From positions 220,261 to 284,260 of the forward strand of contig NIVC01001165.1 in the NCBI GenBank assembly GCA_002269645.1: a DNA stretch of 64,000 bases. Reading direction: 5' to 3'. Below, piece after piece: positions 8,064-54,219 of the stretch. Each line of letters begins with the position of its first letter. Position 1 is the stretch's first letter. The DNA comes from Macrostomum lignano. Its lineage: Eukaryota. Position numbers and translations under genes: made by a program. Under the pieces are notes generated by a model. That model made no database searches. It was given only the letters and a program-made list of their open reading frames with translations, and was not told the origin of the DNA.

Positions 8064-8099
<36 letters not shown>

Positions 8100-8128
8100 T
8101 ATAGATAGATAGATAGATAGATAGATAG
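8064..8128 (+). repeat. (GATA)n microsatellite at the duplication junction
   Basis: Direct reading. Confidence 0.97.
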
Positions 8129-13659: not shown

Positions 13660-13663
13660 TTAA

Positions 13664-26836: not shown

Positions 26837-29800
26837 TCATTCATCATGATCTAACGCCCGAAGTTTCATCTCAACTCGTCGGAAATTTTCCTCATCCTGT
26901 GTCTCCATGGCAACGTGACCCTGGTCCTTGACAATTTGAAATTGATTCATGCAGAACTGCAAATCGCTTGACCTGTCGCTGTAGTGAGCCAGAGTGAGCA
27001 GCTCCTCCAAGTCGGGGTCCTCTATCAGGTCTGGCAGCCAAGTTTCGAACTTTATTGCTCCACAGTTTTGGAGCAGCTCAGCCTGAAGACTCCAGCTCAG
27101 ACAGCGGAAGTTCACGTACAGGTGGGAGGACCGGGGCTGCGACAGCCTGGCTCTGAGCAGCGTCTGCGTGAACTTCGGCAGGAATTCAAAGCGAGGCTGT
27201 GCGCTGATGGGGAAGCAAAACCTCCATGCCCAGTCCACGCCCAGCGGGCACTTAAAGCTTTTGAGGCCGGATGTTTTGTTCCACTGGGTGTGCTGCTCCA
27301 TCTGCCAGCCTGAGGATATGCTGCAGTACTGCAGGTTAACGCTGATTCTCTTAGCCTTCTCAGTTTCTCCGAACTTCAAGTGCGTCATGACCATCAGGCA
27401 CGTGCTGGCGCATCGGCACCACTGCAAGCAGTCTAGATGACCCAGCTGCCTCGTCAGAGTTTCCTTATCGGCGGTGTCTGACTGCAGCTCTCGCAGGCAG
27501 TCGTGAATCATGCTGAAGCCATCGATTAGGTGCTGGCGCGATCTATAATCTGGCTCTCGAATTTGAGCAGTCACAGCTGGCAGCGGCTTCAGCGGCAGCA
27601 AAGTGAACGGGTGACAATAGAAACAGTCGGACTGCAAAGGCTGCACATGGCTCAGTAAGTGACCAACCACGATATTAATTGCATTTCTAAGCTCCTGCAG
27701 TCTGCTTCGAACTCTCGTCTTCGTGTCCTTAAAGTGTCTGCCGATGCCAGCATTCTTAAAGTACAACGGGGCGTCCTTCATGAAAAAGTGCGGTATGCAC
27801 TCGTCAGGCGAGCGGCTCGAATCAATGAAGCGCAGCATCATTGTGAGCGAATCCTTCAACAGTTGGACGAGATTGTCCGGCTGCCAGGCTGCAGCGTTGG
27901 AGACGCCGTGCTTTTCCAGCATGAAGAAGAGCAGAGTCTTGGCATGGTAGGTCTTCAATCCGGGTGTCGCGAAGTTGTCTGGCAGAAGGCGCTTGAATAT
28001 AAATTTGATGATCGTGAACAGCTGGCCCTGAACTGTGCTGAGGTTTCTTAGAATGACCTTCTCTTGGAAGCTGAAACTCAATCTAAGCTCATTATCCATC
28101 TGGGGCCGCGTGGCGCTGACGAGATGCACTTTGCACTTCTCAGCCGACTCCACCAGTTGGATGCCGCCGTCTGTGAAGCCGCTGCAGCACTGGAATGCGT
28201 GGCACCTGTCCTGGGAGGGCCTGACGCCACTGGCTGGGGATCTGACAGCTGGTTGACTGCCTGTGTGAAATTGCATGACCACTCTGACGCGTTCAGTGCT
28301 TCACTTACATATGTGATTGTTTCTAAGGATTGCTGTGGCGGTAGTTTCAAATCCGTATGAAATTAGATTGTGTATCTTGTATCTGACAGGACATTAGAGA
28401 CATATTGATGTTGTGTTGTGTCTGACGGGACATTAGAGACATATTGATGTTGTGTTGTGTCTGACGGGACATTAGAGACATATTGATGTTGTGTTGTGTC
28501 TGACGGGACATTAGAGACATATTGATGTTGTGTTGTGTCTGACGGGACATTAGAGACATATTGATGTTGTGTTGTATCTGACAGGACATTAGAGACATAT
28601 TGATGTTGTGTTGTGTCTGACGGGACATTAGAGACATATTGATGTTGTGTTGTGTCTGACGGGACATTAGAGACATATTGATGTTGTGTTGTGTCTGACG
28701 GGACATTAGAGACATATTGATGTTGTGTTGTGTCTGACGGGACATTAGAGACATATTGATGTTGTGTTGTGTCTGACGGGACATTAGAGACATATTGATG
28801 TTGTGTTGTGTCTGACAGGACATTAGAGACATTAATGTTGTGTTGTGTCTGGCAGGACATTAAGGACATTAATGTTTTGTTGTGTCTGGCAGGACATTAG
28901 AGACATTGATGTTGTGTTGTGTCTGGCAGGACATTAGAGACATTGATGTTTTGTTGTGTCTGGTAGGACATTAGATCGAGACATTGATGTTGTGTTGTAT
29001 CTGATAGGACATTAGAGACATTGATGTTGTGTTGTGTCTGGCAGGACATTAGAGACATATTGATGTTGTGTTGTGTCTGGCAGGACATTAGAGACATTGA
29101 TGTTGTGTTGTGTCTGATGGGACACTAAGGACAACCGGAATATTCAGAAGCCTTTAGCAGTTATCAACAATCAATAATGATCAACTTCTTCGTTCACCCG
29201 TACCTGTTCCAACTGGCACCTGCGCGTGGCCCTGTATGACGGCGAGTTTTCTGGCATCTCTGCACTCGACGCCTCTGTTAGTGCAGCCGCCCTCAATGTG
29301 AAACTGCCTCCCAGAGACCATGACCGTCCAGTCAATGTCCGAGTCGGCAGCTGTTCTGCCGTTCAGCTGCACCAGACTGCTGGCCCAGCCATCAGCGTAG
29401 CTGCCCGTCATCTGCCACTCTTCAGGCTTACTGAGCTCCTGAGCCAAGCCCTCAACCAGGTCAGCCAGCTCCTGCTGACTCCTGGCTCTGGACGCCGTGA
29501 ATCCCGCATTGCAAAGCTCTTGGTGCAGCTGAACGCTCTGGTCACGCTCCAGCTCTGCGTCCCGTTGGACTTCGACATCAAGAGGACATTTTATGCTGAA
29601 GAAAGGGGAGATCAGCATATAGGACTTGTTCATCACCTGAGCATCTTCACTGAATGATCTGCTCACCTCGCTATCCGACCAGGACTGAACAAATTCAGCA
29701 CATCCTGATGCTTGAACTTCTCAGCCAGATCCGCGCAGGTCAGCCCGCGCCCGTCCGCGTGGCTCGGATCGGCGCCCCGGTCTATCAGGCACTTGGCCGC

Positions 29801-31820
29801 TCGCACGTGGCCGGCCTCGCACGCGTGCGACAGCGCCGTCCTGCCCAGCTTGTCCTCAGCCAGGACGGACGCACCGTAGCTCAGCAGCTTGCCGACCAGC
29901 TGGTGGTGTCCGGCATCGGCTGCCAGCATCAGCGCCGTGGCGCCGCTGTCATCTGGCCAATCAACGTCCTGACGTCCGATCCGAGGGATCAGAATGAGAG
30001 CCAGAGCCACGTGACCGCAGGCGATGGAGAGCAGCAGCAGCTGGGCAATCTCAACCGACTGCATTCTGTCAAGAGTTTGGCTGACAATCCCATCGTCATT
30101 GGTGATGGCCTGAGTGGCTAAAAAGTTGAGAGTTGATGGGTCGCGGAACAGCCACTCGGGCTGGATGCCAACCTCTCGGACCAGCTTAGCTTGGCCTCGG
30201 AGAGCCGCCTGGGCGATCACCTTTAAATGATTTTAAGGACAAATGCGGTTTTGCAGAAACAGATACTTACAAGCGCACTCATTCAGGGTATACAGAGGTT
30301 TTGGCTGTCTAATCGTCAAGTCATGTATACTCCAAGGACTACTAAAGTAGAAGGACGCAACACTCGAAATCTCTGGATAGGATGGGAGGCAGATCCAGTG
30401 TTTATCTTTTGATATGTCGTGCCATTTTTATTGTTCAATCGATATTCATAAAGCTTTTCGTTCAGAAAATTAGGATTCTGTGTTAATTTTTTTGTACGTC
30501 CATTTCATCATGCACCTAAAAATCATAAAAATGCATGAATTTTGAAGCTCGAATCTTTGGTTTTAGGAATCTATTTTATCATCTCTGTTACACATTTTGT
30601 TAACACAGTAGTCAGTTAAGAATGACAAAATAGATTCATAATAAAACCATGTAATGAGCTGAGCCGTGCCATTTTAATGGTTTTTAGGCACATGACAGAT
30701 GCAATTGTACGCAGAATATGAAATTTACACATAATTTGCTGAAAAATGAACTTCCCATCTCCATACGTATAGTGTACTTTTTGGCGAAAAGTGGCCTTCA
30801 AAACTTTTTCCTTGAAACGTGAGTGTCGCGTCCTGGATATACGTTGCTTTAGTTGTCCTTGACACACTGTCTGCGCCTTGGAGGGCGGGTTGGCCTTCAT
30901 GGGAGTCAACAACCCCCCCCCCCCCCCAGCTAAGTTTCCTGCAGAAGCCCCATATGAATGCCTTCTGTTACCTTCTGTTTGCAGTCGTCTTTAACTCGAC
31001 TGTCCACAATGGAGTTCATGAAGCGATTCGCTATTTGGAGACTGCCAGCGCCAGCCGCGGCCGCTGCTGCGCCGACGCGGCAGTGGTCTCGCAGAGACTC
31101 GCTCGAGATCAGCCCGATGACAGAGTCGGTCATCTCCACCTCGCCATTTCTCACCGCTGTGGGAATCGTGTCCCGGTACCACTGATCACTCACTGCGGCG
31201 TCGGCTATGAGCCCAGTGTAGAACAGCACCTGTTGCACCTGTTTCCGCTCCATTGCTCTGCGCGCCGCCACAGCGCAGCAGCGGTTCCTGGTCTCAGGAT
31301 CGGCGATGACCTTCAGCAGCAGCGGTGTCGCCAGCTGCCAGCGAGCGGTCGTGGCCAGCAGTTCAACAGTTGTCGCGCACCAGCGATCGCTCTCAGGCCC
31401 ATCCGGCAGGTGGCGCAACAGAATCTCGGCGCTCTCGATCGGGCCTCGGGTCAGCGCGAGCTCCGCGGCCTCCCTGTGACACTGCGCTCGCTCCTCCGGC
31501 TCGATCAGCTGGCTGACGAAGGTCTGGAAGACTTGCAGATCGCCCCACTTGGCCGCCGTCAAGGCCAGGCGCTTGCCGCTGCTCCGCCTGCTCTGGGGGT
31601 CGCTGATGGATTCGGCCAGGAACTGCGCCACCGACCAGTGGCCCATGGCTGCAGCGGTCCTTGACGCTTCATCGCAGCACTCGTCGGCGAAATAAGGAGT
31701 AGCGACCCGAAGCAGCTCGGCCAGGCCGCTCTGCACCATGGCCATGTCGCCAGCCTGAGCTGATCGCATCAGGTCGCGCTGAAGCTGCACTTCGACGCTC
31801 TTTGAAGCGCGGCTCCCCAT
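26837..31820 (-). CDS. Ankyrin-repeat + Mab-21/cGAS-like nucleotidyltransferase (cGLR-like), 4 exons, about 1072 aa
   Basis: Exons 31820-30972, 30220-29667, 29595-29204, 28260-26837; phases 0/2/1 are consistent with GT-AG sites. ANK motifs GATALMLAADAGH and GRTALSHACEAGH; NTase TGSYADG...DSDIDW; Mab-21 C-lobe LRLSFSFQEK...KTYHAKTLLFFMLE...W...PHFF. An alternative upstream ATG lies at 31844. Confidence 0.85.
28375..29130 (+). repeat. 39-bp minisatellite in cGLR intron 3
   Basis: Unit GACATTAGAGACATATTGATGTTGTGTTGTGTCTGACGG, degenerating to 37-bp variants towards 29130. Confidence 0.95.
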
Positions 31821-35570: not shown

Positions 35571-36386
35571 AAGCAAGCAGTACCCTGTCTTGACTGTCAA
35601 CTTAAGCGCTCTGTGCAAAGGGTCCCCAAATTGTAAGCAAGTCTAAACACCAGGCAGTTCAGAATGGCTGCAGTTGAGCTCTTTCAGTCGAGTTTCTGAG
35701 CTTCTGTCGAGCTGAACTCCTGCCTCTCACGGCACCGAGCCCGATGCTTCTGCGTGATTGAGCATCAGCATAGCGGTGAGCAGCAGCACCAGCTACCCTT
35801 AGCGACATTCTCACAACCAACGTGCATCCGGAGCTGCTCTTATTTATTTCCGACCTTTCGACAGCTCGGAAACGACCACGACCGTCGAGCCACTTTCGGC
35901 AGCGCTCACTGCGCTGAACATGATGAAGAAGGCCTCCTTAACTTGCCCCTGACTGATCATGCAGCTTCTTGACGGCGGTGACGGCCAGCACAGCAGTTGA
36001 AATCGCAGCCCAGATGGACAGGCAGATGCGGGCCTTGGTGGAGAACTGACCGATCCGCTTATTCGTCATATTCGCAATGCCAGCGCATGCCGGGCTCGGG
36101 CGAATCTCGGCAATGCGAGCTGGGCTTTCTGTCTTGAAAGCGGTGTTTGCAGCAGCTCTGATGAGGCTTGGCAGAGCCTGGCCTGAGAGCACTGGCAGCT
36201 GCTGCGAATGAGCGGGACGATAAAGCCGCAAGCGAATTCCAAACTGACGACTCTGCTCCCCCGATGAGTCTTGCGTTGCGACTCAAATGACTCGATGCGA
36301 CTCTGAGCACATGAGACGAAAAGGGTGACCCAAAAGTTCGGTTCTGTTCCATGGAATCCCGTCTGATTGCATAAACCCTGAACACA

Positions 36387-37827
36387 CAGCACAATACTGA
36401 TAGAACAGACAGCACAATACTGATAGAACAGACAGCACAATACTGATAGAACAGACAGCACAATACTGATAGAACAGACAGCACAATACTGATAGAACAG
36501 ACAGCACAATACTGATAGAACAGACAGCACAATACTGATAGAACAGACAGCACAATACTGTTAGAACAGACAGCACAATACTGATAGAACAGACAGCACA
36601 ATACTGATAGAACAGACAGCACAATACCGATAGAACAGACAGCACAATACTGATAGAACAGACAGCACAATACTGATAGAACAGACAGCACAATACTGAT
36701 AGAACAGACAGCACAATACTGATAGAACAGACAGCACAATACTGATAGAACAGACAGCACAATACTGATAGAACAGACAGCACAATACTGATAGAACAGA
36801 CAGCACAATACTGATAGAACAGACAGCACAATACTGATAGAACAGACAGCACAATACTGATAGAACAGACAGCACAATACTGATAGAACAGACAGCACAA
36901 TACTGATAGAACAGACAGCACAATACTGATAGAACAGACAGCACAATACTGATAGAACAGACAGCACAATACTGATAGAACAGACAGCACAATACTGATA
37001 GAACAGACAGCACAATACTGTTAGAACAGACAGCACAATACTGATAGAACAGACAGCACAATACTGATAGAACAGACAGCACAATACCGATAGAACAGAC
37101 AGCACAATACTGATAGAACAGACAGCACAATACTGATAGAACAGACAGCACAATACTGATAGAACAGACAGCACAATACTGATAGAACAGACAGCACAAT
37201 ACTGATAGAACAGACAGCACAATACTGATAGAACAGACAGCACAATACTGATAGAACAGACAGCACAATACTGATAGAACAGACAGCACAATACTGATAG
37301 AACAGACAGCACAATACTGATAGAACAGACAGCACAATACTGATAGAACAGACAGCACAATACTGATAGAACAGACAGCACAATACTGATAGGACAGACA
37401 GCACAATACTGATAGAACAGACAGCACAATACTGATAGAACAGACAGCACAATACTGATAGAACAGACAGCACAATACTGATAGAACAGACAGCACAATA
37501 CTGATAGAACAGACAGCACAATACTGATAGAGCACACAGCACAATACTGATAGAACAGACAGCACAATACTGATAGAACAGACAGCACAATACTGATAGA
37601 ACAGACAGCACAATACTGATAGAACAGACAGCACAATACTGATAGAACAGACAGCACAATACTGATAGAACAGACAGCACAATACTGATAGAACAGACAG
37701 CACAATACTGATAGAACAGACTGCACAATACTGATAGAACAGACAGCACAATACTGATAGAACAGACAGCACAATACTGATAGAACAGACAGCACAATAC
37801 TGATAGAACAGACAGCACAATACTGAT
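36387..37827 (+). repeat. 23-bp minisatellite (CAGCACAATACTGATAGAACAGA), about 63 units
   Basis: Direct tandem units. Confidence 0.97.
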
Positions 37828-38162
37828 ACTGGATTGATACTAAATCAATACTGGAAATTACCATGCAATGATCAATTAATGTACAGAGAAATTCTGTCTG
37901 TTTGAGTAGCACAAATTTCTGATTTAGGTTGTTCAGCCTTTTATAATTGCTTATTGAGTATAAATATTGTTTTCACTTTTTATGCGCTCGAGTGTTTTCA
38001 GTCAGTAAAACTCTTGCAATCAGGGAGACATAAAAATTTTGTGCAGGTAATAATTAGCAGCAGCAGCAGGCTTGTTCGTCTCCTAAACGTGTTTTAGCAT
38101 AATTCCGAGAATCAGTATTTAAATCAACAGAGTGCACCACTGAGTTGCTCAATTTTTGATGC

Positions 38163-41100
38163 TCAAATCTGCAGCATTAGCCGCATTTCACGAAGAAGCA
38201 GCCAGACAGAGCCAGAGTACCAGATCATATAGCTGGTATCTGATCTCTCTCGCCAAGTTAAAAGTCCGTTAGGGTTAGTATTTAGGCAGTATTTAAACCA
38301 CCAGCCTCCTTTCCCATTTCTGTTTGAGCATGAATAACTCATTTCGTCATTGTCCCTGTCCATCGTGGAGAACCGCATTCCTTTGTGGGTCTCCAAAGCG
38401 TCAAAGCTGACACTGGACCTGTCCCTCAGCATCTCTCGGTACGTCATCCGATACCTAGTGCTGGCGTCTCCCACCTGGAATCCCGCGTACTCCAGATGCA
38501 GCTCAGAGCCGTTCCACAGCTTCATCTCCACTCTGAGGGTGGCGCCGCCTTGGCTGAGCGAGTGGATGGCGGAGAGACCTGCGGGAGGAGAGCGGCTGAG
38601 TCTGAGTCACTTCTGCTCGGCTTTTCGCCGCTGCTTCCATTCGGATTCTGAGATAAATATTTTACGAATGTGCGTTTCATAGCAGATGGTGGATCTAAAT
38701 TTGTTAATTGCCTAAATTATCCATTTTAAGCCTTCTGATATCCCAGCTGAGCTACCTGCTGTACTGAGACTGCAAGACGGGTTTTTAATTGTATCAGGTG
38801 AGGACTGAAGCAGAATGTCATCTGAATACTTCTGTTCTCTACTAAAAGAAAAGTTAATTTTAAGAGTCAGTCGATCAGTTGCAAGCACAAGCTGAAGAAC
38901 TGAGTCGGGAGGTGCTGCTCTGACTGGTGCTGCTCTGGCTGGTGCTGCTCTGGCTGGTGCTGCTCTGGCTGGTGCTGCTCTGGCTGGTGCTGCTCTGGCT
39001 GGTGCTACTTCGGCTAAAGAACTTGATTTTCGTAAAAGTCCACAACAACAACAACAACAACAGAGTACGCTGCCAGTTCGCAAAAAGCAGCGTCAGATGG
39101 CGCGCTTCAAAGCTTGGGCGCGAACAAAAGCCGCACCGCCGGCAGAGTCCGGGGCGCCGGCGTCAGCCAGCAGACAGTCGACGTAGCGCCGAGTCCTCGC
39201 CTGTCCCCGCCGGTAGGGTGCCTGCAACGTAAGTAGCAGCACCTCCTGCACCGGCTCCGGACAGTAGGCCTCGGCGCGGATGACGTGGCCTGCCAGCTGG
39301 AGTCGCCGACGGCGCAGCAGATCGCTAGGACGGGCCAGGCCGGCACGATGATAGAGCGCCGTGCAAGAACTCCTTGGCGCCGTGTTGGTGACTCGCTCGT
39401 TGCCGATCTTGAAGGCGGCGCGCAGCAGGCCAGAGTGCGCCGCGTCGACTTGAGTCTCGAGCGAGTCTGTCAGCGTCCAGGTCTCGGCGTTGTATAACAG
39501 GACGGTCTCGATCACCGCCTGGAACAGCGCCGCCCTCTGGCGGTCTGGTAGGGCCTCGGACTGCAGGACTGACCTTATAGAACGAAAGGCAGCCCAGGCA
39601 AGTAATCGGCGACGCAGCAGATCCTCGCGGATGTCGGGAACCAGACCGCCGAGGTAGACGAACTGGGTCGGTCCGGAGTGGCTGGGTCGGTCCGGAGTGG
39701 CTGGGTCGGTCCGGAGTGGCTGGGTTACCAAAGCAATAGCAACAAAAGTCCATCATATGGATCAAAATTTGCTATGTCCGACGAACATACTCTCAAAGTC
39801 ATTTGACGTCAGCATCGTCAAGATATTCAACGTACGATTCTTGTCGAAGACACTGGAGGCAAGGACAACCAACAATACACGTAAATTAAACATGTCTAGT
39901 TTGATGCATTGATAAAAAAGCACGATTATACAAGTATGGCGGTGTCAGCTCGTCGGGGCACTCCGTTGAAGGTCTCAAAAGTCGCCTGTATGTCTACAGG
40001 TCAGCCTAGAGGGTCGCCCAAGGCCTACTTAACAACACAGGACGTTACACTTGCAAATATTGGCAGAATTCTAAAAGGCCGCTTTGAATGCATGTGTCTA
40101 TGGTTTTAGTGGCCTTTTTGCATGTGTAAAATACATTAAAAGGCTATATTCACTATACTTTTGTCGTAACCTAGGTCGGTTTTGGTGCTCAGTCCCGAGT
40201 ACAATATATATTATACGTGATATAACAGGCGTTGTGACGCTCTGTCTGTACTTTTATGAATACGAGCTGGCGTAACGACGCTCTGCGATAATAGTCCGAT
40301 CCCTTTGGTGTTGTGACACTCAGAGTTCACGCTGTGGCTCGAGGTGTGGTGACACTCTGATCGAGTGCTTCTAGTCTCGATACTGTAGGTTGTACACACT
40401 ATATAGAGTAGACGGGTACAGTACTACAAAAGCTATATGATCTCCCGGCGTTATGACGCTCTGGCAAGAACCCGGCCTAACAAGCTCCCAGAAAGAAGGA
40501 TCTTAAGCAGCAGGCGGCTTACCAGTGGCCAAATCGCCGATACGTTTATTGATTCGCTCGTTGTACAGTGCAGGTTCTAACCTCCAAGATTCTTCTTAAG
40601 GCTCTTGTGTTTCTTTTCTCGTATTCAATAGCTAGAGTTGCTGTTTAACCGTCTAGTCTCGCACTTGTACTCTCCGAGCACACTAATTAATACCACAAAA
40701 CAGAACGAAGGGCGTGAGCAAGGCCCAGAGCCGCAATAAATAATAATTAAACCCTGGGGCCGATGGCCGCACCGGCTAAGCCCACCAACCAAGCTACCCC
40801 AACAAAATAGAGACTGGCCGCGCCGGCCCAGCCAATCAAAACCCCGCCTAGGGGGAGGGGCCGCACCCGCACCAAAGCTGGTCCGGCCGCAGCCAACCAG
40901 CTCTGAGCACGGGGCAGGGGCACGGCTCCAGGGGCACGCGCAAAGCCCGGCCGGCGGCCAGACCCTGCCACGCCCGCCAACCCCCCAACCAGCCCCAAAG
41001 TGCAACGCGCCCTGCCAACTGACAAGGGCGCATGCACTACACTTTTATTTCTATTAAGTGCATGTATTCCAGTCCTTTGTATTCTTTCAAAAAGATAAAC

Positions 41101-44100
41101 GAGGTGAAAATTTTTAACAAAGAAGAAATACCCGAAATAACGGAATTCCTAGATGCGTTTCTAATGTGTAGAAGCATCGAAAAAATTAGCTACGAAAGCA
41201 ACAAGAATGAATACCGAATGATAGGAACTGCACTTTATTCAATGATTATACGCTGGTATTATTGGTATGCTCATAGTGCGAATCCTGAACTTGTCTAAAA
41301 TGAAGCAACACGAAGGCACCAAAGATGACAATGAACTATCCTCAAAATGAAAGCGTCGAAAAAAACTTTGATTAGTAAAGACTTCAAGGGAAGTGGTCAA
41401 GTAAAGTAAAAGACAGTTAGTAAAGTGGTTGTCACACATAATATTCTGGATGAAGACTGTAAATAGTAGGGACGAGCCGGGCTACGAATACGGATGCCTG
41501 TACGGGCTAGCTTATCTGGAGTATCCTCTGGCTATCAAATGACGTGACACCCACGAAGACGCAGAGATGGTTGTACGCTCGTACGTAAATATCATCGAAT
41601 ATGGTTGAACAGTTGCGTTGTGAGAGAGTGCAGCGCTTAAGATGTGTCTCGACAATGTTTTGACAGCCATGTAGAAATCTGCCCCAACTGTTCCCATGTG
41701 CCGTTTTGAGAGTCGAGGCTCCGCTTGCTTCATTCTAGCATCCTCCGGCCAATACTTGCGGCATACGCCCATGTGTGCAGTGAAATGTTACCCTACCTTT
41801 GCTGCAATGGCAAAGCTTTCATCCAGGAGTCAACCTTCCTCTTCTTTCAGAAAAGTAATGTAATACACGGTGCACCTTTCACCGCTTTTGTAGTGCTGAT
41901 GCAGCCTGAAGTTGTTGTAGTTGTAGTTGTTGTTACAACTAACCCTAACAGGAGTCTGCAACACTTCTTCGGTATCTTGTATAACTTAACTGAATTTGAA
42001 GCAAAAAAATAAGAGATTCCGAGAACGCAAAGAAGTTAGCTGTTTGCTCTGTCTACTTGATGCTCTATGCTAGACTTATAGGCTATCATGCTGCGCTGCT
42101 ATGCGAATTACTAAGCAAAAATGGCACTAAAACCATAGACACTAGCGGCATTTTAAAGCGGCATTTTAAAATTCTATCAATATTTGCAAGTGTACCGTCC
42201 TGTGTTGTTAAGTAGTCCTTGGGTTGCCATTGTCCATTTCATTCACCGATTATGTCTACTGACAGAATTTTTGTTGCAGAAGAGGAATCTTCCATTTCAG
42301 TTTTGGGAATTCAGCCGTCTCTGAGATGCCGATCGGGTGCTATTGTTGAAGGTCCCGACGGTCGCCGCCGATGCTCCAGACGGGGATGAAGGGGGCCCTG
42401 GTGTCTGGGATGCTGAGAGCAACCCTGCGACTGATAAGCATAGTTTGTTGAGCCAACGTGGTGTCATGATGAAATTATTTAAGCCGAAAATTTTTGCCAA
42501 TGTTGGTGGTTTTTGCCACCAGACACCTACTTTCTACCGCCAATGCTTGATGCGAGCGATACCAAGTCAGCCACTAACGAATCTTTAACCGGGTGACTCC
42601 TTCGAAATACTTTGATTTCACTAAAAAAACATGCAACTCAATATTTTATGTTCATGTTAAAACTCTACGCTCGTAAATCATCTAAAAAAACATGGTGGAA
42701 TATGGATTCAGGTTTCTCCTCGAACTAAGAATCAAAGATGACAGTAACTCAACATTTTAAGTCAGCTGAGCAGCGAATCCTTCAATTCCCATTCCATCAA
42801 TTCAATGCATTCCGCCATTCACTTAGAATGAGTCACCTAGCCTTCGCTTAGAAGGAGCGGTTCGAAATCTGCTCCCACTACTGACACACAATATTAGCTG
42901 GTACGAGTACAAAACTGCCGCTCACCGATCCAGAAGTCAGTGCTGTCACCGAAGCCAGTCTCGTACTCAGTCCAATTTCGTTGGAAACTCACACTGCCAG
43001 TGAGTCGCTGCTGAATCTTCACAAACCAGCGACCGTCTGGCAGGAACGCCACTGTGCGTTGGGCAAAGGCACCTTGCAGTCTGACGCAGGACTTAAGACT
43101 GGAGCAGCTGACTGCACCTTCAGACGCTTTCATTCTCCATGATGAAGTGATTTTGCTGGACTTGGAGAGGCACTGCTCAGCAACTAGCGACGTAACCCGC
43201 CACTGCACGTGTCGCCACAGGTCAGCGGGCTCTGCCAGCACAGCAGACCCGGAAATTGTCAAATCCATTTTTAAACGGCACAGAAAAAATTTAAAAAGAA
43301 AAGAAACAAATACAAACGCATCGAAAGCCTGATCTGACCGCTCAATAGCACCCAAGCTGACACTAAAGAGATTTTGTATTACTCTCGCTAACACTCAAGA
43401 TGTCCTGTTAAGTAAACAGCATCTAAAAAACAAAACTGAAATTTCGAATTTGGTGCAATGAAATTTTAAAACCCCTCAGAAAAATCAGCCAACCTAAGAT
43501 GGCGGCACTCCGTCAAGGTTCTGCAGAGCAGCCGCAGCTGAGCGGACCTCCAGTCTGCCGACGCCATCAGCGGACCGACCTCGAACCGAGAACTCAGCGA
43601 AGAGCTCACCGATCTCTCAGCAGTCCACAGCCGCATGAAATCGACCGAGCGAGGCGACAAGTCGGCCAACTGAGTCCTCACAGCATCGCGTGTGGCCTCA
43701 TCTTGCAGCACCAGATCCAGCTTCAGATAGTGCATGTCTCGGCTGTAGTCATACCTGACTGACTCGCTGCTCAAGCTGGAGACGTTGTGGCACAGCAGAG
43801 GCTCGATGAGGAAATGGCCCTTGATGTCGAGTCTCTGGTGCACTCGGGCAGAGCAGTTCTCGAGATTGACGGTGCGGATGAATTTCAGCTGTCGGCATGT
43901 CGGCAGAGGTGAGAATCTTTGCTGGTGCAAGTCCAGATCGAAAATGCTGTCGTTTTGCAGCAGGACGCGGCTCTGAACCTCATGACAAGATCCGTTTGAA
44001 ACGATAAAAGCTGATAACTTTACTTTTTCAAGAGCCTCTCGTGGTGAGCTTTTAAAGTCATCAATGCGCTTCAGCTGGGCCCTTACTGATTGAAAATACC

Positions 44101-44635
44101 GGAGGGGTAAATTTTCCTTTAAAATCTTTGGACCTGAAACTTTACTTGAATCGTTCTTCAAAACAATCCTTTTGAAGCCGAGTCTCAGAGTGGCTACTGA
44201 CTCATTCGGAGTCCACAGAAAGCCCAAAACCCGAATCGATGAGCGGGTGTCGGCTGAGACGCTGATGTTGGTCACCGTGGCGAAGCTCACAGACCTCGGT
44301 GACAGATGCCGAAGTTGAAACTGAGCCTCTGCAAGCATCCCAGCATCCTTCATCAATACAGGAACGCTGAAGTACAGTTGCTGGGTGATGAAGTCGAATC
44401 GGGGAACAATGCCTCTCAGGCTGTCCGTCACGCACATGAGCGGCTCGACTGCCAAGTGCGGACCGTCGCTCGCTCCCGTGTCGTGCACGAACAGCGCGCA
44501 GCCGTTCACGCTGAGCTGCGCCACGAAGCGGAGCCGCGGAGAGTCAGCGGGAGCGCACTGGGAGACCTGGCCGGCTGCCAGCGAGCAGAGCAGCAGAGCC
44601 AACGCTGCAGAAACTCGCAACTGAAAGAGCTGCAT
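38163..44635 (-). CDS. Secreted fibrinogen-domain (FReD) protein, paralogue 1, 3 exons; intron 1 acceptor non-canonical
   Basis: Exons 44635-43494, 43248-42926, 38578-38163. Signal peptide MQLFQLRVSAALALLLCSLAAG; FReD motifs IQQR..GSVSFQRNWTEYETGFG...FWIG|LSAIH..., FSTMDRDND...C...GGWWF..C...NPNG. The expected acceptor reads CCGG rather than CAG. Confidence 0.75.
38920..39005 (+). repeat. 15-bp repeat (GGTGCTGCTCTGGCT) x5-6
   Basis: Direct reading. Confidence 0.9.
39043..39743 (-). mobile_element. 5'-truncated RTE-like non-LTR retrotransposon in FReD-1 intron 2
   Basis: ORF end YLGG...AWAAFRSI...FQAVIETVLLYNAETWTLT...LQLAGHVIR...LKRAI*; (TTG)n 3' tail at 39043-39061; candidate TSD AAAAGTCCA (39034-39042, 39744-39752); three 19-bp repeats at the 5' junction. 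Confidence 0.88.
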
Positions 44636-46836: not shown

Positions 46837-48074
46837 TCTTTTGATGATTTTAACTGATTTCATGTGCAACCTGTAAAAAATCTCATATGAATGTCCAGAG
46901 TCTCCTGCTGCTGTTTGCTGAAGGTGCCCACTGCGTCTGGATGATGACCGAAAGCTTGAGAATCTAGATGAGGCCTCAACCCATTGTCACCTGTCGGATC
47001 AACCAGTGGGTGACTTCAAAGCACTGGGAGAGGTGCATCAGCTGACGCCACCGACTGCCGGCAATCCCGCGCGGCTGTCCCCCCTGTCCTTTTCCCGCCC
47101 TCCGAAGGGCCCCACTTGGACTCCACCGAGGGGACATCAGGGCGGGGACCATGGCCCTCTCTGGACATGCCTGTTTTGCCAGGCATCGTCACCTCAAGGG
47201 TAAAATCCGTAGCGAGGAATACCCATTCTGCCTCTCCAGTGTCGAGAGTGGGAGCACTTCATCTGTGATTTCCCGCCTTTACTCACGACTGGCTCCTGTA
47301 AGCACTCTGGGCAAAGGGTCCCCAAATTGTAAGCGAATCTAAACGCCACGCAGTTCAGAATGACTGCAGTTGAGCTCTTTCAGTCGAGTTTCTGAGCTTC
47401 TGTCGAGCTGAACTCCTGCCTCTTCACGGCAACAAGCATCATGCTTATGTGTGACTGAGCATCAGCATAGCGGTGAGCAGCAGCACAAGCTACCCTTAGC
47501 GACATTCTCACAACCAACGTCCATCCGGAGCTTCTCTTGACGATTTCCTCAGCTCGGAAACGACCACGACCGTCGAGCCACTTTCGGCAGCGCTCACTGC
47601 GCTGAACATGATGAAGAAGGCCTCCTTAACTTGCCCCTGACTGATCATGCAGCTTCTTGACGGCGGTGACGGCCAGCACAGCAGTTGAAATCGCAGCCCA
47701 GATGGACAGGCAGATGCGGGCCTTGGTGGAGAACTGACCGATCCGCTTATTCGTCATATTCGCAATGCCAGCGCATGCCGGGCTCGGGCGAATCTCGGCA
47801 ATGCGAGCTGGGCTTTCTGTCTTGAAAGCGGTGTTTGCAGCAGCTCTGATGAGGCTTGGCAGAGCCTGGCCTGAGAGCACTGGCAGCTGCTGCGAATGAG
47901 CGGGACGATAAAGCCGCAAGCGAATTCCAAACTGACGACTCTGCTCCCCCGATGAGTCTTGCGTTGCGACTCAAATGACTCGATGCGACTCTGAGCACAT
48001 GAGACGAAAAGGGTGACCCAAAAGTTCGGTTCTGTTCCATGGAATCCCGTCTGATTGCATAAACCCTGAACACA

Positions 48075-48624
48075 CAGCACAATACTGATAGAACAGACAG
48101 CACAATACTGATAGAACAGACAGCACAATACTGATAGAACAGACAGCACAATACTGATAGAACAGACAGCACAATACTGATAGAACAGACAGCACAATAC
48201 TGATAGAACAGACAGCACAATACTGATAGAACAGACAGCACAATACTGATAGAACAGACAGCACAATACTGATAGAACAGACAGCACAATACCGATAGAA
48301 CAGACAGCACAATACTGATAGAACAGACAGCACAATACTGATAGAACAGACAGCACAATACTGATAGAACAGACAGCACAATACTGATAGAACAGACAGC
48401 ACAATACTGATAGAACAGACAGCACAATACTGATAGAACAGACAGCACAATACTGATAGAACAGACAGCACAATACTGATAGAACAGACAGCACAATACT
48501 GATAGAACAGACAGCACAATACTGATAGAACAGACAGCACAATACTGATAGAACAGACAGCACAATACTGATAGAACAGACAGCACAATACTGATAGAAC
48601 AGACAGCACAATACTGATAGAACA
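48075..48624 (+). repeat. 23-bp minisatellite, second locus, about 24 units
   Basis: Same unit and same left flank as 36387. Confidence 0.97.
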
Positions 48625-48937: not shown

Positions 48938-51900
48938 TCAAATCTGCAGCATCAGCCGCACTTCACAAAGAGACAGCCAGACAGGGCGAGAGTACCAGCA
49001 CATATAGCTGTGATCTGTTATCTTCCATCGACAAGAAAAAACTCCGTTAGGGTTGAAGTTATGACAGAAGTTGAACCACCAGCCTCCCTTTCCCTGTTTT
49101 TTTGAGCATGAGTAAGTTGCTTTGTCATTGTCCCTGTCCATTGTGGAGAACCGCATGCCTTTGTGGCGCTCCAAAGCGTCAAAGCTGGCACTGGACCTGT
49201 CACTCAGCATCTCTCGGTACTTCATCCGATACCCAGTGCTGGCGTCTCCCACCTGGAATCCCGCGTACTCCGCATGCAGCTCAGAGCCGTTCCACAACTT
49301 CATCTCCACTCTGAGGGTGGCGCCGCCCTGGCTGAGCGAGTGGATGGCGGAGAGACCTGCGGGAGGAGAGCGGCTGAGTCTGAGTCACGTCTGCTCGGCT
49401 TGTCGCCGCTGCTGTCAGGTGAGTGGCATTTCAAATGAAAACGCACAGGGTGTTACACTGAAGATAGTGCAGATAAATTCAGTTAAAATTTAGCTTTTTT
49501 GTGATGACAATCTGGATTAATGCGCAAATGAATTCTGCTGATTCATATATAGCTATGATTTTTTGCGATGATAAATTGAAAATACCAGTTATTGTGCTCC
49601 CGTTCTCCCGCAGCTTCACGCTCATGCACCACATGCATCATTTTGGCTTACTAGACTTTAAAAATTTACCATCTCTCTGCATTTATATTATTGCCTGAAG
49701 ATGCCGATTGTTCGGCGAAACATGTCGCACGAAGAATAATACCGGTAAATTGTAATTTGGCATTATTAAAGAAAAAATGCGAATGTTCGAATTTTTGCTT
49801 TCGTTCCCCAGGCTTTTCATGGCAATTATGGTTTAATATTTTTTGGAGATCCAGACCAGGGACAACTAAAACCCTCGGGACGCGAAACGAGCCAATTCAT
49901 GGCAAAAAATCTGAGGGGCTTGCTTAAAAGTATTGTTCTATGGCTTTTTCAAGTCTTCTCTGCTATCAGGCATTAACGGTTAGATTAAATAGTAAAGCGA
50001 GGCAATGTCGAGTATTTAATTTAAAGAATAGGAACCAGTGATATAACTACAATGTATTTACAATAAGGTAACCGCCATATCAACAAAAAACTCCAACGGC
50101 AAGAAGATAAAAGATGAAAGCGAAGATGAAACTCCAACGGCAAGAAGATAGAAGCAAATACGGTACTCCAAGGACAAGACGACACAAACAGTCAGTAGCT
50201 CGTACATAAAGGAAACGCTGGAACTTCACCTACTGAGCATCTAACTTCCGAAGCTTTCTATCATGGGATGTCGTCGGTATTGGTGGGAGTTTTGACGAGC
50301 GTCTTACTGGTCCTTTGAAAAAAACGTTGGCTAGCCGACGGGACACACTGTCCATGCTGAACTGTGTCTTAGTTGGAAAGTAAAAGTCCTTAATAACATA
50401 AAACAGCTTCTGCACGCGAGTTGCGCACGTAGGAGAGTGCAGAATAAAACTGCTGTAGCAGAGACAGGATAAGTCTAACAGCCATTGTGGAGGATGACAA
50501 AGCTTTCCAGGTAAACAAGTAAACATCTTCGTTCAGAATAGCTGTGTTCAGTGCATGTCGAGATACGACATCCGAATTTTTCACCTCAGCTCGAAAACTT
50601 TCCCATGCCGGCAAAAAATCAAGCAGCTGAAAAGCGTCCATCTCATCGATGTCGCCGCACCTCGCGTCAGAAAGAACACCGCGCTTTTCGGCCTGTCGGT
50701 CCTGGTCTAAAATAAGAGTAAAAATAAAAGTAAGATAATTGTGAGCGGCAAAATCGATATAGACGCTAAGTGTTGAGCAATCTTTAAGTTACGTACCTTG
50801 GTTCTGAACAAAACACGAGCTAGGAACTCCATTAAAAACAGAAGGAGGATTAATTGGCCTTTCGGTAGAGTTTTTCTTGACCATTGGAGCATCGCTTGGC
50901 CAATGCTTTACGCACACGCCCATATTGTCAGTCACTCTCTATAATAATTAATTTTGGGTTCCAAGTTGTTTGGACGAGACTGGCATGCAGAATTGAAGCG
51001 GAATTATGCAGCAGTAATGACAGCAAATGATCTGGTTTCTTACCTGGAGAATATTTGGCAGCGCCTTTCTCCATCGCTCTCGCTCCTGAGGATCTCTGGG
51101 AAATGCAAATGTCCGTGTTCGAACGGCTTCAGAGTTGTAATTTGACGAGCACGGAAATACGCTGCACTTTCTTGGCATTTCATCAAGTGAATAAAAAATG
51201 CTTCTCTTGATATAGTTCAGCTTAGCTTCACTGATGGCCGCAGCTAAAGCAATTTTAATTTGCCTGATAGCAGAGAAGACTTGAAAAAGCCATAGAACAA
51301 TACTTTTAAGCGAGCCCCTCAGATTTTTTGCCATGAATTGGCTCGTTTCGCGTCCCGAGGGTTTTAGTTGTCCCTGATCCAGACAAAGGAAAAATGTGTG
51401 TATTTGAAATGCACCTCCATGGTCTTTCTTCTGTCAATGCTTGAAGCGAGCGATACCAACTCAGCCACTAACCGATTTTTAACCAGGTAACTCCTTCGCA
51501 ATACTTTGGTTTCACTTGAAACATGCAAATAAATATACTTTTTGCAGCCCATTTGGGCTTACGCGCATCGAATTTAATCCAAGATATGTTTGTCAAAGTA
51601 ACAGAGCTTTTGTCTATGGTAGCAAGGCTGGCACAGCGGCATTTAATTTGGTCAACAAGCATCAATTTGGTCCATTTAGTTCATTTGCAGCTCAGTCCTA
51701 GAATTGTGGACCATATGCTAGGCTGTTGAACGAATGTCATTGGCTTGTGATCGAAGCACTCGACGGAGGTGAACACCCAAAGGACATTGCAAGGTTGCTG
51801 AATGTAAAAGAAAAGGTGGTTTACAGCATCCAGCAGCGCCTTGAAACTCTGCCGGCAGAGATTGCCTGCGAAAGGGTGGCAATTGCCAAGGAAAGTTGCT

Positions 51901-54219
51901 CGAGAGCCTCAGGTCCAACTGCTACTCGATGCAGTGGAGACGAACCCTTTGTTGACGTTTCAGAAAATGCAGCAGAAGTTGAGGGAACAGCTCCAGTTGG
52001 TTATCAGATTTCGACTATCAGCAGAGCTCTGGAAAAGCAACTGAAAATTTTTGGTAGAGACGCTGACATTCCAGCGGTGCGCAACAACCTGCAGACGGTT
52101 GAGAGAAGGCAAGAGTTTGTCCAATGGCTCACGAGTGTTTGGACCAAATGGATGCTTTTTGGACCAAATTAAATGTCGCTGCGCCAGCCTTGCTACCATA
52201 GACAAAAGCTCCATTACATTGGCAAACGTATCTTGGATTAAATTAAATGCGCGTAAGCCCAAATGGGCTGCAAAATGCTATATTTTATGTTCATGGTAAA
52301 ACTCAAAATCATCTAAAAACATGGTGGAGTATGGATTCAGGTCTCCTGAAACAAAAAATAAAAGAATTGATGGTCTCATCTTTTTGTCGCACTCGATAAT
52401 GGCAGCAGCCTCCAGAACACCAGTGATCCTGATGACAGTAACATGTTTTTAACTTTTAAAAAACATTTTTAATCAGCTGAGCAGCCAATCCTTCAATCAA
52501 CATTCCATCATCAGTTGAATGCATTCCGCCATTCACTTAGAATGAGTCACCTAGCCTTCGTTTAGAAGAAGCGGTTCAAAATCTGCTCCCACTACTGACA
52601 CACAATATTAGCTGGTACAAAACTGCCGCCCACCGATCCAGAAGTCAGTGCCGTCACCGAACCCAGTCTCGTACTCAGTCCAGCTTCGTTGGAAACTCAC
52701 TATGCCAGTAAGTCGCTGCTGAATCTTCAGGAAGCAGCGACCGTCTGGCTGCAGTTGAACCGCACTGGAAGAACCCGCTGTGCGCTGAGCAGAGGCGCAT
52801 TGCAGTCTGGCGCAGGATTTCAAACTGGAGCAGCTGGCTGCATCTTCAGACGCTTTCATTCTCCATGATGAAGTGATTCGGCTGGACTTGGAGAGGCACT
52901 GCTCAGCAACCAGCGATGTCACCCGCCACTGCACGTGTCGCCACAGGTCAGCGGGCTCCGCCAAAAGTGCAGTCCTGAATTTAGTAAAAATACATAAAAT
53001 TATTTTATACGTGCAAAAACGCGCTTTGATAAATAGATCGTGAAAAGAAAATCTTTATCGACAGCAAACACGCTGACCTGAGTTTGCGGCAACTCCTCAA
53101 GTTTCCGCAGAGCAGCCGCAGCTGAGCGGACCTCCAGTCTGCCGACGCCATCAGCGGACCGACCTCGAACCGAGCACTCAACGAAGAGCTCACCGATCTC
53201 TCAGCAGTCCACAGCCGCATGAAATCGACCGAGCGAGGCGACAAGTCGGCCAACTGAGTCCTCACAGCATCGCGTGTGGCCTCATCTTGCAGCACCAGAT
53301 CCAGCTTCAGGTAGTGCATGTCTCGGCTGTAGTCATACCTGACTGACTCGCTGCTCAAGCTGGAGATGTTGTGGCACAGAAGAGGCTCGATGAGGAAGTG
53401 GCCCTTGATGTCGAGTCTCTGGTGCACTCGGGCTGAGCAGTTCTCGAGATTGACGGTGCGGATGAATTTCAGCTGTCGGCATGTCGGCAGAGGGGAGAAT
53501 CTTTGCCGGTGCAAGTCCAGATCGAAAATGCTGTCGTTTTGCAGCAGGACGCGGCTCTGAACCTCATGACAAGATCCGTTTGAAACGATAAAAGCTGATA
53601 TCTTCACTTTTTCAAGAGCCTCTTGTGGTGAGCTTCCAAAGTCATCACTGCGCTTCAGCTGGGTATTTGCTGACTGCCAGTTCTGCAGCGAAAAACTTTT
53701 GTGTACCAGTTCTGAAACTGAAACTCCGCTTGGATTGTTCTTTGAAACAATCATTTTAAAGCCGAGTCTCAGAGTGGCTACTGGCTCATTCGGAGTCCAC
53801 AGGAAGCTCAAAACCCGAACCGATGAGCGGGTGTCGGCTGAGACGCTGATGTTGGTCACCGTGGCGAAGCTCACAGACCTCGGTGACAGATGCCGAAGTT
53901 GAAACTGAGCCTCTGCAAGCATCCCAGCATCCTTCATCAATACAGGAACGCTGAAGTACAGTTGCTGGGTGATGAAGTCGAATCGGGGAACAATGCCTCT
54001 CAGGCTGTCCGTCACGCACATGAGCGGCTCGACTGCCAAGTGCGGACCGTCGCTCGCTCCCGTGTCGTGCACGAACAGCGCGCAGCCGTTCACGCTGAGC
54101 TGCGCCACGAAGCGGAGCCGCGGAGAGTCAGCGGGAGCGCACTGGGAGACCTGGCCGGCTGCCAGCGAGCAGAGCAGCAGAGCCAACGCTGCAGAAACTC
54201 GCAACTGAAAGAGCTGCAT
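48938..54219 (-). CDS. Secreted fibrinogen-domain (FReD) protein, paralogue 2, 3 exons, about 633 aa
   Basis: Exons 54219-53078, 52974-52634, 49356-48938; phases 2/1 consistent, all GT-AG; same motifs as paralogue 1. Confidence 0.88.
49857..51376 (-). mobile_element. Non-autonomous THAP-containing DNA transposon (P-element-like), 1520 bp
   Basis: 116-bp TIRs starting CAGGGACAAC (one mismatch); perfect 8-bp TSD ATCCAGAC; internal THAP exon 51178-51044 MPRKCSVFPC...FAFPRDPQERERWRKAL|GT; degenerate ORF at 50230-50700. Confidence 0.9.
51538..52278 (+). mobile_element. Internally deleted Tc1/mariner (IS630-like) element
   Basis: About 125-bp imperfect TIRs, TA at both flanks, absent from the homologous FReD-1 intron (about 42640). 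Frameshifted HTH-like N-terminus IARLLNVKEKVVYSI...STISRAL...RNNLQTVERRQEF; no DDE core. Confidence 0.72.

What the first reader, a model, noticed from the sequence alone, without database searches (positions are those of the whole stretch)
43494..44635. FREP-like architecture: two copies of an unrecognised domain in front of a fibrinogen domain
Seen: exon 1 of both FReD paralogues has an internal repeat about 190 aa apart (RLRFVAQLSVNGCALFVH / QLKFIRTVNLENCSARVH; HLAVEPLMC / HFLIEPLLC; RFDFITQQLYFSVPVLMKD / RYDYSRDMHYLKLDLVLQD; QLRHLSPRSVSF / QLADLSPRSVDF) with two conserved Cys. I do not recognise the family. Established: invertebrate FReD lectins carry variable N-terminal modules (IgSF in snail FREPs, collagen in ficolins). 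Inference: a beta-rich recognition or oligomerisation module defining a new FReD class.
Basis: partly seen in the sequence, partly recalled or inferred. Interest (0 to 1): 0.7.

Follow-up and report, generated by a model that had tools for sequence, protein, structure and literature searches.

The report
Flatworm lectin genes with new stalk domain
Two neighbouring flatworm (Macrostomum) genes encode secreted fibrinogen-type lectins whose front half is two copies of a protein domain of about 170 residues, found only in this genus, that matches no Pfam family and no solved structure; the same domain also sits in front of C-type lectin heads.

Summary
Exon 1 (43494-44635, minus strand) encodes a signal peptide and two homologous units (blastp E 9e-11; profile-profile 98.2%). 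A paralogue lies at 53078-54219. The spacing is about 214 residues, not 190.

It has about 165-175 ordered residues, is alpha/beta rather than purely beta-rich, and is held by three inferred disulfides. Unit 2 runs across intron 1 into exon 2.

The unit matches nothing in Pfam or in PDB sequences. With a diverse 28-unit alignment, AlphaFold2 gives pLDDT 90.7. That model has no Foldseek match in the PDB. It has one borderline match, to an uncharacterised Medusavirus protein.

An exhaustive HMMER search of 1.84 billion representative proteins found the domain only in Macrostomum lignano and a few unnamed contigs. It occurs once or twice before a fibrinogen-related domain, and six times before a C-type lectin domain. 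A phase-2 intron sits at the same site in the units checked.

I read it as a lineage-specific modular stalk that presents lectin heads (inferred, confidence 0.5).

Two side results. The hypervariable linker in unit 1 looks like an exonised intron. Intron 1 of paralogue A ends in GG, not AG.

Verdict: a new variant of a known kind, of moderate interest.

The parts
43494..44635 (-). Paralogue A, exon 1: signal peptide, unit 1, and unit 2 up to the start of helix alpha-2 (380 codons plus 2 nt, phase 2).
   Evidence: ORF and translation; donor AG|GT; gene model.
44570..44635 (-). Predicted signal peptide, aa 1-22 (MQLFQLRVSAALALLLCSLAAG|Q).
   Evidence: Read from the sequence (n-, h- and c-regions); no signal-peptide predictor was run. 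A/B DNA homology starts exactly at this ATG.
43961..44557 (-). Unit 1, aa 27-225. Cys pairs C27-C217 and C46-C68 are inferred; the CX5C pair is lost.
   Evidence: HMM domain 27-154; unit alignment; Cys covariation; Cys positions.
44078..44173 (-). AT-rich hypervariable segment inside unit 1, about aa 155-186; probable exonised intron.
   Evidence: dN/dS 0.94 over aa 134-205 between A and B. GC is 0.35-0.40, against 0.57 for the rest of exon 1. It lies where P0015, P0018 and P0025 have an intron, and the genomic length matches exon plus 80-nt intron plus exon in P0015.
43494..43915 (-). Unit 2, exon-1 part, aa 241-381. Contains C247, C261-C282 and C371-C377.
   Evidence: HMM domain 241-372; AF2 model of the B equivalent, pLDDT 90.7.
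43137..43248 (-). Unit 2 tail in exon 2, aa 381 to about 418: last helix, strands beta10-beta11 and C407, which closes the N-to-C disulfide.
   Evidence: Unit alignment; AF2 ordered to unit residue about 178; Cys 7-167 covariation.
43249..43493 (-). Paralogue A intron 1. It starts with GT but ends with GG (43249-43250) instead of AG.
   Evidence: No in-frame alternative acceptor was found when reading.
42926..43248 (-). Paralogue A exon 2: unit 2 tail plus the first part of the fibrinogen-related domain.
   Evidence: tblastn with P0001 and P0004; Pfam Fibrinogen_C positions 41-81; model.
38163..38578 (-). Paralogue A exon 3: rest of the fibrinogen-related domain, to the stop codon.
   Evidence: tblastn; sequence; model.
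53078..54219 (-). Paralogue B exon 1, same content as A exon 1. The first 399 nt are identical to A.
52634..52974 (-). Paralogue B exon 2; intron 1 is canonical GT..AG.
48938..49356 (-). Paralogue B exon 3: fibrinogen-related domain, C-terminal part, to the stop codon.

Best explanation
Each gene encodes a secreted multidomain lectin. The N-terminal two thirds are two tandem copies of a disulfide-clasped alpha/beta extracellular module known only from Macrostomum. The module has about 165-175 ordered residues and six Cys forming pairs 7-167, 21-42 and 131-137. A fibrinogen-related head follows.

I propose that the module is a modular stalk or scaffold. It spaces and presents the C-terminal carbohydrate- or acetyl-group-binding head, while ligand recognition is done by the head.

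The module multiplied by tandem duplication of a symmetric phase-2 exon, and is combined with either a fibrinogen-related or a C-type lectin head. In the subfamily present in this window, the intron inside unit 1 was lost by exonisation. This produced a Cys-free, fast-evolving linker between the two units.

Shown: the homology of the units, their predicted fold, the Cys covariation, the restricted distribution, the shared intron, and the two kinds of lectin head.

Inferred: secretion, the stalk function, and ligand binding by the head.
For: - Repeat homology.
- Confident single-domain model for unit 2 (pLDDT 90.7, pTM 0.82, all five models 89.5-90.7).
- Cys covariation across 28 units: positions 21/42 are 21 both, 7 neither, 0 discordant; 131/137 are 24/4/0; 7/167 are 19/4/5, and two of those five are truncated sequences.
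- The same unit occurs once (P0028), twice (most fibrinogen-type proteins) or six times (P0022 shows six; five are detected in P0035/P0036, with a gap where a sixth fits). P0022 has a Ser/Thr/Pro-rich N-terminus.
- hhalign of unit 2 against the C-type-lectin units: 99.9%, E 1.9e-34.
- A phase-2 intron lies in the 3rd-4th codon after the second Cys of CX5C in window intron 1, in four units of P0035, and in both units of P0025; it lies at the homologous alignment position in P0015 and P0018.
- The head keeps the FSTMDRDND and GGWWF..C..NPNG motifs and aligns to fibrinogen, angiopoietin-like and ficolin structures at E 1e-25 to 1e-20.
- Unit 2 is under purifying selection (dN/dS 0.16 between A and B).
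Against: - No experiment or expression data bear on function; I found no paper on these proteins.
- A stalk role is an argument from architecture only.
- The nearly invariant Glu-Pro in the 'EPL' motif could mark a functional site rather than a structural one.
- The oligomeric state is unknown.
- The structure is a prediction from 28 sequences, many of which are repeats from the same proteins.
- I could not inspect coordinates, so the disulfide geometry was not checked against the model.
Confidence: 0.5

Rival explanations
1. The unit is itself a recognition module, a flatworm counterpart of the immunoglobulin-type domains of snail FREPs. The hypervariable segment in unit 1 would give each paralogue its own specificity.
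For: - Large tandemly arrayed family: at least 21 clusters at 90% identity plus more divergent ones.
- Aa 134-205 evolves at dN/dS about 0.94, and differs in length and sequence between paralogues, while the flanks are conserved.
- Nearly invariant Glu-Pro across 28 units.
Against: - The variable segment has intron-like composition and lies at an ancestral intron site. It replaces a helix and a disulfide that other family members keep. This looks like relaxed constraint, not a designed binding loop.
- dN/dS about 1 is neutral, not positive selection.
- The first 133 codons are identical between A and B, synonymous sites included.
- The same unit serves two unrelated lectin heads.
Confidence: 0.2
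2. The units are an oligomerisation device. They would replace the collagen or coiled-coil regions that multimerise ficolins, angiopoietins and tenascins, giving avidity to weak lectin heads.
For: - No collagen-like or coiled-coil segment was detected by Pfam, or is evident on reading the sequence, anywhere in the protein.
- Fibrinogen-type lectins generally act as multimers (established knowledge).
- Paralogue B has an odd number of Cys in the mature chain, 19.
Against: - Paralogue A has an even number of Cys, 14, all accounted for by inferred intradomain pairs.
- The monomer model is compact and confident.
- Copy number varies from 1 to 6, which is unusual for a dedicated oligomerisation domain.
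- No multimer prediction could be run.
Confidence: 0.2
3. The feature has no biological meaning: the genes are decaying pseudogenes or annotation artefacts, and the 'domain' is not a functional protein module.
For: - Intron 1 of paralogue A ends in GG instead of AG.
- Several database models of relatives are fragmentary or frameshifted.
Against: - Paralogue B has all canonical splice sites and an intact 633-codon reading frame.
- Unit 2 has dN/dS 0.16.
- Units align across proteins only 14-30% identical, with covarying Cys pairs.
- A 4758-nt intron-free contig from a public sequencing run encodes a full six-unit C-type-lectin protein that is colinear with, and 49% identical to, the M. lignano one.
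- AF2 confidence is high.
Confidence: 0.03

Closest known systems
Snail FREPs (Biomphalaria glabrata fibrinogen-related proteins; PMC7588048)
   Same: Secreted proteins with a signal peptide, one or two N-terminal modules and a C-terminal fibrinogen-related domain. They form a large family of clustered paralogues. Family members here also carry one (P0028) or two N-terminal modules.
   Different: FREP N-terminal modules are immunoglobulin-superfamily domains joined to the head by an interceding region. Here the module is an unrelated six-Cys alpha/beta unit of about 170 residues with no Pfam match. No somatic diversification is known or testable here.
Ficolins, tachylectin-5, and angiopoietin-like or tenascin fibrinogen-related domains
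   Same: The C-terminal head aligns to these solved structures (E 1e-25 to 1e-20). It keeps the Asp-rich Ca2+-site motif region and the P-subdomain Cys pair.
   Different: There is no collagen-like or coiled-coil region. Only Pfam profile positions 36-215 of 221 match, and PDB alignments start at the 'WTVIQRR' equivalent, so the N-terminal A subdomain is reduced or divergent.
Uncharacterised protein A0A7S7YF07 of Medusavirus stheno T3 (BFVD predicted structure)
   Same: This is the only structural match found: Foldseek E 2.4e-4, probability 1.00, TM 0.52 normalised to the query, 172 aligned columns, rmsd 4.4.
   Different: Sequence identity is 15%. It did not appear in the exhaustive sequence search. 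The target is itself a prediction and has no known function. The TM score is borderline, so common ancestry is not established.
Stalked C-type lectins with repeated spacer domains (for example selectins with CCP repeats; established knowledge, not tested here)
   Same: A C-terminal or terminal lectin head carried on a tandem array of small disulfide-bonded extracellular modules, with variable copy number. P0022/P0035 carry six units and a C-type lectin domain.
   Different: The repeating module is a different, much larger domain, and is restricted to one flatworm genus as far as the searches reach.

Membership tests
Fibrinogen-related domain proteins (Pfam PF00147) | Match to the Fibrinogen_C profile above the curated cut-off. 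| tested here: met
   Paralogue B aa 455-628, 129.6 bits against a cut-off of 22, E 2e-37. Pieces of A and B also match.
Fibrinogen-related domain proteins (Pfam PF00147) | Conserved Ca2+-site region and P-subdomain Cys pair (FST.D.D.D ... C ... GGWW..C..N.NG). | tested here: met
   FSTMDRDND, SCS...GKGGWWFNFC.NFNPNG align with FSTFDRDAD, C...GGWWYNNC..ANLNG of fibrinogen-420 and ANGPTL2.
Fibrinogen-related domain proteins (Pfam PF00147) | Complete N-terminal A subdomain (profile positions 1-35, first disulfide). | tested here: inconclusive
   Pfam and PDB alignments start only at profile position about 36, the 'FLKIQQR' equivalent. A Cys-containing stretch of about 37 residues precedes it, but its model confidence is low (pLDDT 54-59).
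Snail-type FREPs (IgSF + fibrinogen-related domain) | One or two immunoglobulin-superfamily domains N-terminal to the head. | tested here: not met
   No Ig-type Pfam hit even at E <= 10. Foldseek matches to Fab chains have probability <= 0.16 and TM <= 0.21.
Ficolins | Collagen-like Gly-X-Y region N-terminal to the head. | tested here: not met
   No collagen Pfam hit and no Gly-X-Y run in the 626- and 633-residue products.
Any curated Pfam-A domain (for the N-terminal unit) | A significant profile match to the unit. | tested here: not met
   0 families for exon-1 proteins at E <= 1. 0 for the repeat halves at E <= 10; the only hit is TRPM_tetra on the inter-repeat segment (E 0.094, below cut-off). 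Across 28 units there are only scattered single hits at E 0.03-0.3. Profile-profile search against Pfam (HHpred) was not available.
Any solved structure (for the N-terminal unit) | Sequence or fold similarity to a PDB chain. | tested here: not met
   Profile searches of PDB sequences give nothing better than E 1.2. Foldseek with the pLDDT-90.7 model gives 0 hits at E <= 1e-3, best TM 0.25. AlphaFold DB was not available.
Proposed Macrostomum six-Cys alpha/beta unit (family defined here) | Three covarying Cys pairs (7-167, 21-42, 131-137) and the F.(I/L)EPL.C, SV.F and LR.xC-x5-C motifs. | tested here: met
   Unit 2 of A and B has all six Cys and all the motifs. Unit 1 has pairs 7-167 and 21-42 but has lost the CX5C pair.
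Proposed Macrostomum six-Cys alpha/beta unit (family defined here) | Phase-2 intron in the 3rd-4th codon after the second Cys of CX5C. | tested here: met
   Present in window intron 1 of unit 2 (C377-R-K-L-R|), in four units of P0035, and in both units of P0025; P0015 and P0018 have it at the homologous alignment position. Absent from unit 1 of the window genes, where it is probably exonised.

The most novel reading that the evidence does not exclude
The unit is a new protein fold that arose within macrostomid flatworms. It acts as a diversified recognition or assembly module for an expanded lectin repertoire, a flatworm counterpart of snail FREPs. The exonised intron in unit 1 would serve as a paralogue-specific variable loop, kept next to a 5' region that gene conversion homogenises.
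Probability: 0.12. Interest if true: 0.75.

Novelty: new variant of a known kind. Interest (0 to 1): 0.5.

Why it matters
Fibrinogen-related and C-type lectins are the main soluble pattern-recognition molecules of invertebrates. Their N-terminal partners (immunoglobulin-type, collagen, coiled coil) decide how they assemble and diversify.

Here a free-living flatworm genus, one that is a transgenic laboratory model, has built both lectin types on a module absent from Pfam. That module has no solved structural relative in the PDB. This gives:
- a candidate new extracellular fold, with a confident model and a clear disulfide map to test;
- a clean case of domain-array growth by duplication of a symmetric phase-2 exon whose boundaries lie inside the domain;
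- a probable case of an intron turned into a fast-evolving protein linker;
- a gene family of 40 or more models, open to RNAi and in situ work in M. lignano, about which I found nothing published.

It does not overturn any concept. The function remains inferred.

Tried and rejected
- **AF2 on the whole N-terminal region.** With only close paralogues (alignment A1, 18 sequences) the mean pLDDT was 39.9, which is unusable. I did not use that model for fold search.
- **Alignment queries to the search for homologous proteins.** A3 and the low-complexity-cleaned A4 returned only 3 and 2 already known fragments, so both were unproductive.
- **The search for related loci on metagenome contigs.** The single-protein query matched 363 patterns, but none was confirmed by tblastn.
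- **Odd UniRef names.** Some fragments are named EST3, PHM7_ext, SHR-BD or CAP10. Pfam finds none of those families on them, even at E <= 10. I treat the names as artefacts of chimeric or old gene models.
- **Low-scoring hits in the exhaustive search.** P0032/P0054 (the sponge Sycon; repeated 'EPLMCSTRI' low-complexity matches) and P0033 (a simple repeat) are rejected as spurious.
- **SEA-like or ferredoxin-like relationship.** Foldseek gives only low-probability partial hits to small alpha+beta proteins (TM <= 0.25), and the SEA 'G|SVVV' motif is absent.
- **Furin-type release of the head at 'RKLR'.** Rejected: the motif is not conserved between paralogues and lies inside a helix between paired Cys.
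- **Cys 167 pairing with Cys 7 of the next unit.** Rejected: P0018 loses both Cys within unit 1 while unit 2 keeps both.
- **Rescue of paralogue A's splice site.** I looked for an alternative in-frame acceptor or donor for intron 1 and found none.
Full report
**What is at the coordinates.** The window is eukaryotic DNA. On the minus strand, 43494-44635 is the first exon of a three-exon gene, paralogue A. Its exons are 44635-43494, 43248-42926 and 38578-38163, giving 626 codons. A tandem copy, paralogue B, lies about 9.6 kb away. Its exons are 54219-53078, 52974-52634 and 49356-48938, giving 633 codons. All of B's introns are GT..AG. Intron 1 of A is GT..GG, and I found no alternative in-frame site. 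A may therefore be mis-spliced or recently disabled, although its reading frame is intact.

All 21 word-indexed homologues are Macrostomum lignano proteins carrying PF00147, at 46-95% local identity. Over the full length, B is 93% identical to P0004. The window therefore comes from M. lignano or a very close relative.

**The observation.** The internal repeat is real:
- Smith-Waterman score 111 against 29.2 +/- 4.8 for shuffles (z = 17).
- blastp E 8.9e-11.
- Profile-profile 98.2%, E 2.7e-14.

The C-terminal fibrinogen-related domain is confirmed.

**What the repeated thing is.** Pfam finds nothing for the exon-1 proteins or for either repeat half. The inter-repeat segment gives only a TRPM_tetra hit below cut-off, at E 0.094. 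PDB sequences also give nothing. An HMMER profile search of 1.84 billion representative proteins with a merged repeat-1 plus repeat-2 profile returned only 16 proteins at E <= 1e-3. The real hits are M. lignano proteins, plus three unnamed contigs from public runs or metagenomes.

These hits changed the picture in two ways. First, the same module occurs six times in proteins of about 1440-1460 residues that end in a C-type lectin domain (P0022, P0023, P0035, P0036; PF00059). P0022 has a Ser/Thr/Pro-rich N-terminus. The module occurs once in P0028 and twice in the divergent fibrinogen-type proteins P0024, P0025, P0029 and P0030.

Second, the repeat period in the six-unit proteins is about 195-200 residues. 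After 'LR.xC-x5-C..L' come a helix, two strands and a final Cys. In the window genes, this tail of unit 2 lies in exon 2.

**Structure.** AlphaFold2 on the whole N-terminal region with close paralogues failed (pLDDT 39.9). With the diverse 28-unit alignment, unit 2 of paralogue B (aa 241-447) gave mean pLDDT 90.7 and pTM 0.82. All five models scored 89.5-90.7. The ordered part runs to about unit residue 178 and has about 11 strands and 3-4 helices.

Cys columns covary across the 28 units:

| Cys pair (unit positions) | both present | neither | discordant |
|---|---|---|---|
| 21 / 42 | 21 | 7 | 0 |
| 131 / 137 | 24 | 4 | 0 |
| 7 / 167 | 19 | 4 | 5 (two are truncated sequences) |

I infer three disulfides, one of which clasps the N- and C-termini of the unit. 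That clasp supports the unit boundaries.

In A and B, unit 2 has all six Cys (247-407, 261-282, 371-377). Unit 1 keeps 27-217 and 46-68 but has lost the CX5C pair.

Foldseek with this model found no PDB chain at E <= 1e-3; the best TM was 0.25. Among predicted viral structures there is one match, an uncharacterised Medusavirus stheno protein: E 2.4e-4, TM 0.52, 15% identity. This is a lead, not a classification. AlphaFold DB and HHpred were not available, so 'new fold' is not proven.

**Gene-level evidence that the units are one family.** Window intron 1 interrupts unit 2 in phase 2, in the fourth codon after the second Cys of CX5C (C377-R-K-L-R|).
- In the M. lignano C-type-lectin gene P0035, exons 5-7 each encode about 200 residues.
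- All four introns checked in P0035 sit at the same site and phase: C-A-G-L-R|, C-R-T-L-H|, C-R-D-L-S|, C-E-A-L-V|.
- P0025 has this intron in both of its units.
- P0015 and P0018 are tandem neighbours. Both have an intron at the homologous alignment position in both units.

So the array grew by duplication of a symmetric phase-2 exon whose ends lie inside the domain. Both kinds of lectin head are attached after a unit tail.

**The variable linker.** Between A and B, codons 1-133 are identical, including all 101 synonymous sites. Codons 134-205 have dS 0.24 and dN 0.23. Unit 2 has dS 0.065 and dN 0.010. DNA homology between the two genes starts exactly at the ATG and stops at the exon-1 donor. 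This mosaic suggests gene conversion of the 5' part.

The window genes lack the unit-1 intron and have about 27 extra residues at that spot.
- The genomic distance between flanking conserved codons is 228 nt. That nearly equals the roughly 226 nt of exon plus 80-nt intron plus exon in P0015.
- The segment has GC 0.35-0.40, against 0.57 for the rest of exon 1 and 0.30-0.35 for the neighbouring introns.

I infer an exonised intron that replaced helix alpha-2 and its disulfide with a freely evolving linker. This also explains why the repeat spacing here is 214 residues rather than about 190.

**The head.** The fibrinogen-related part aligns to fibrinogen-420, ANGPTL2, ficolins and tenascins (E 1e-25 to 1e-20). 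It has the Asp-rich motif and the P-subdomain Cys pair. The alignment starts only at the 'WTVIQRR' equivalent, so the A subdomain is reduced or divergent.

**Interpretation.** These are secreted lectin-type proteins; the signal peptide was read from the sequence. Their heads are carried on a lineage-specific, disulfide-locked module. The module is used with two unrelated heads and in one, two or six copies, and its folded core is conserved while only a degenerate linker varies. I therefore favour a modular stalk or scaffold role (confidence 0.5) over a recognition role (0.2) or a dedicated oligomerisation role (0.2). The pseudogene or artefact reading is very unlikely for the family as a whole (0.03), though paralogue A itself may be impaired.

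I found no literature on these proteins. The closest known architecture is the snail FREP (PMC7588048), but the N-terminal module is unrelated to immunoglobulin-type domains.

**Verdict.** The finding is real, and the domain is unrecognised by every library available here. It is a new variant of a known kind: invertebrate lectins with a novel N-terminal module. It is of moderate interest, with function still to be tested.

Noticed in passing
window 43249-43250 (minus strand, end of intron 1 of paralogue A): The acceptor dinucleotide is GG instead of AG; paralogue B has AG at the same place. No in-frame alternative site was found, so A may be mis-spliced, use a non-canonical site, or the base may be an assembly error.
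   Followed up: partly
window 44237-44635 and 53821-54219: The first 399 coding nucleotides of the two paralogues are identical, including all synonymous sites, while later parts differ (dS 0.065-0.24). A/B homology starts exactly at the ATG. This suggests recent gene conversion of the 5' end.
   Followed up: partly
window 36380-37828 and 48068-48624: A 23-nt satellite (GAACAGACAGCACAATACTGATA; 63 and 24 copies, 98-99% matches) lies just downstream of each lectin gene. The whole gene-plus-satellite block was therefore duplicated in tandem.
   Followed up: no
window 39093-39731 (minus strand, inside intron 2 of paralogue A): A 212-residue ORF with a reverse-transcriptase-like look (my reading of '...LLYNAETWTL...'), but no Pfam hit at E <= 0.01. 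It is probably a retrotransposon fragment, and would account for A's longer intron 2 (4.3 kb against 3.3 kb in B).
   Followed up: partly
window 2512-3081 and 11427-11996 (minus strand): Two identical 189-residue ORFs with a WSC domain (PF01822, E 5e-14). With the flanking 29-nt and 16-nt tandem repeats (236-1052 / 9568-9967; 5756-6044 / 14670-14958), they mark a second tandem segmental duplication of about 8.9 kb.
   Followed up: partly
window 26837-28282, 29181-29666, 29663-30220 (minus strand): A long ORF with a Mab-21 C-terminal domain (PF20266, E 8e-6) lies next to ORFs with ankyrin repeats (PF12796, E 1e-26). This may be one gene for a Mab-21/cGAS-like protein with ankyrin repeats.
   Followed up: no
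window 22746-23675 (plus strand): A DEAD-box helicase exon (PF00270, E 6.6e-43) that looks like UAP56/DDX39 by eye. It is followed by a 45-nt tandem repeat at 23666-24403.
   Followed up: no
L003 (M. lignano NIVC01001149.1) 6698-8933, 10001-12054, 13400-14450, 15778-16176: P0018 and P0015, which are only 46-60% identical to the window proteins, are tandem neighbours, with further partial family copies beside them. Divergent subfamilies are therefore clustered too.
   Followed up: partly
L001 (Logan SRR30276812 contig, 4758 nt), ORF 199-4587: An intron-free, transcript-like contig encodes a six-unit C-type-lectin protein that is colinear with, and 49% identical to, M. lignano P0035. It is presumably an orthologue from another species, whose identity I could not determine.
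   Followed up: partly
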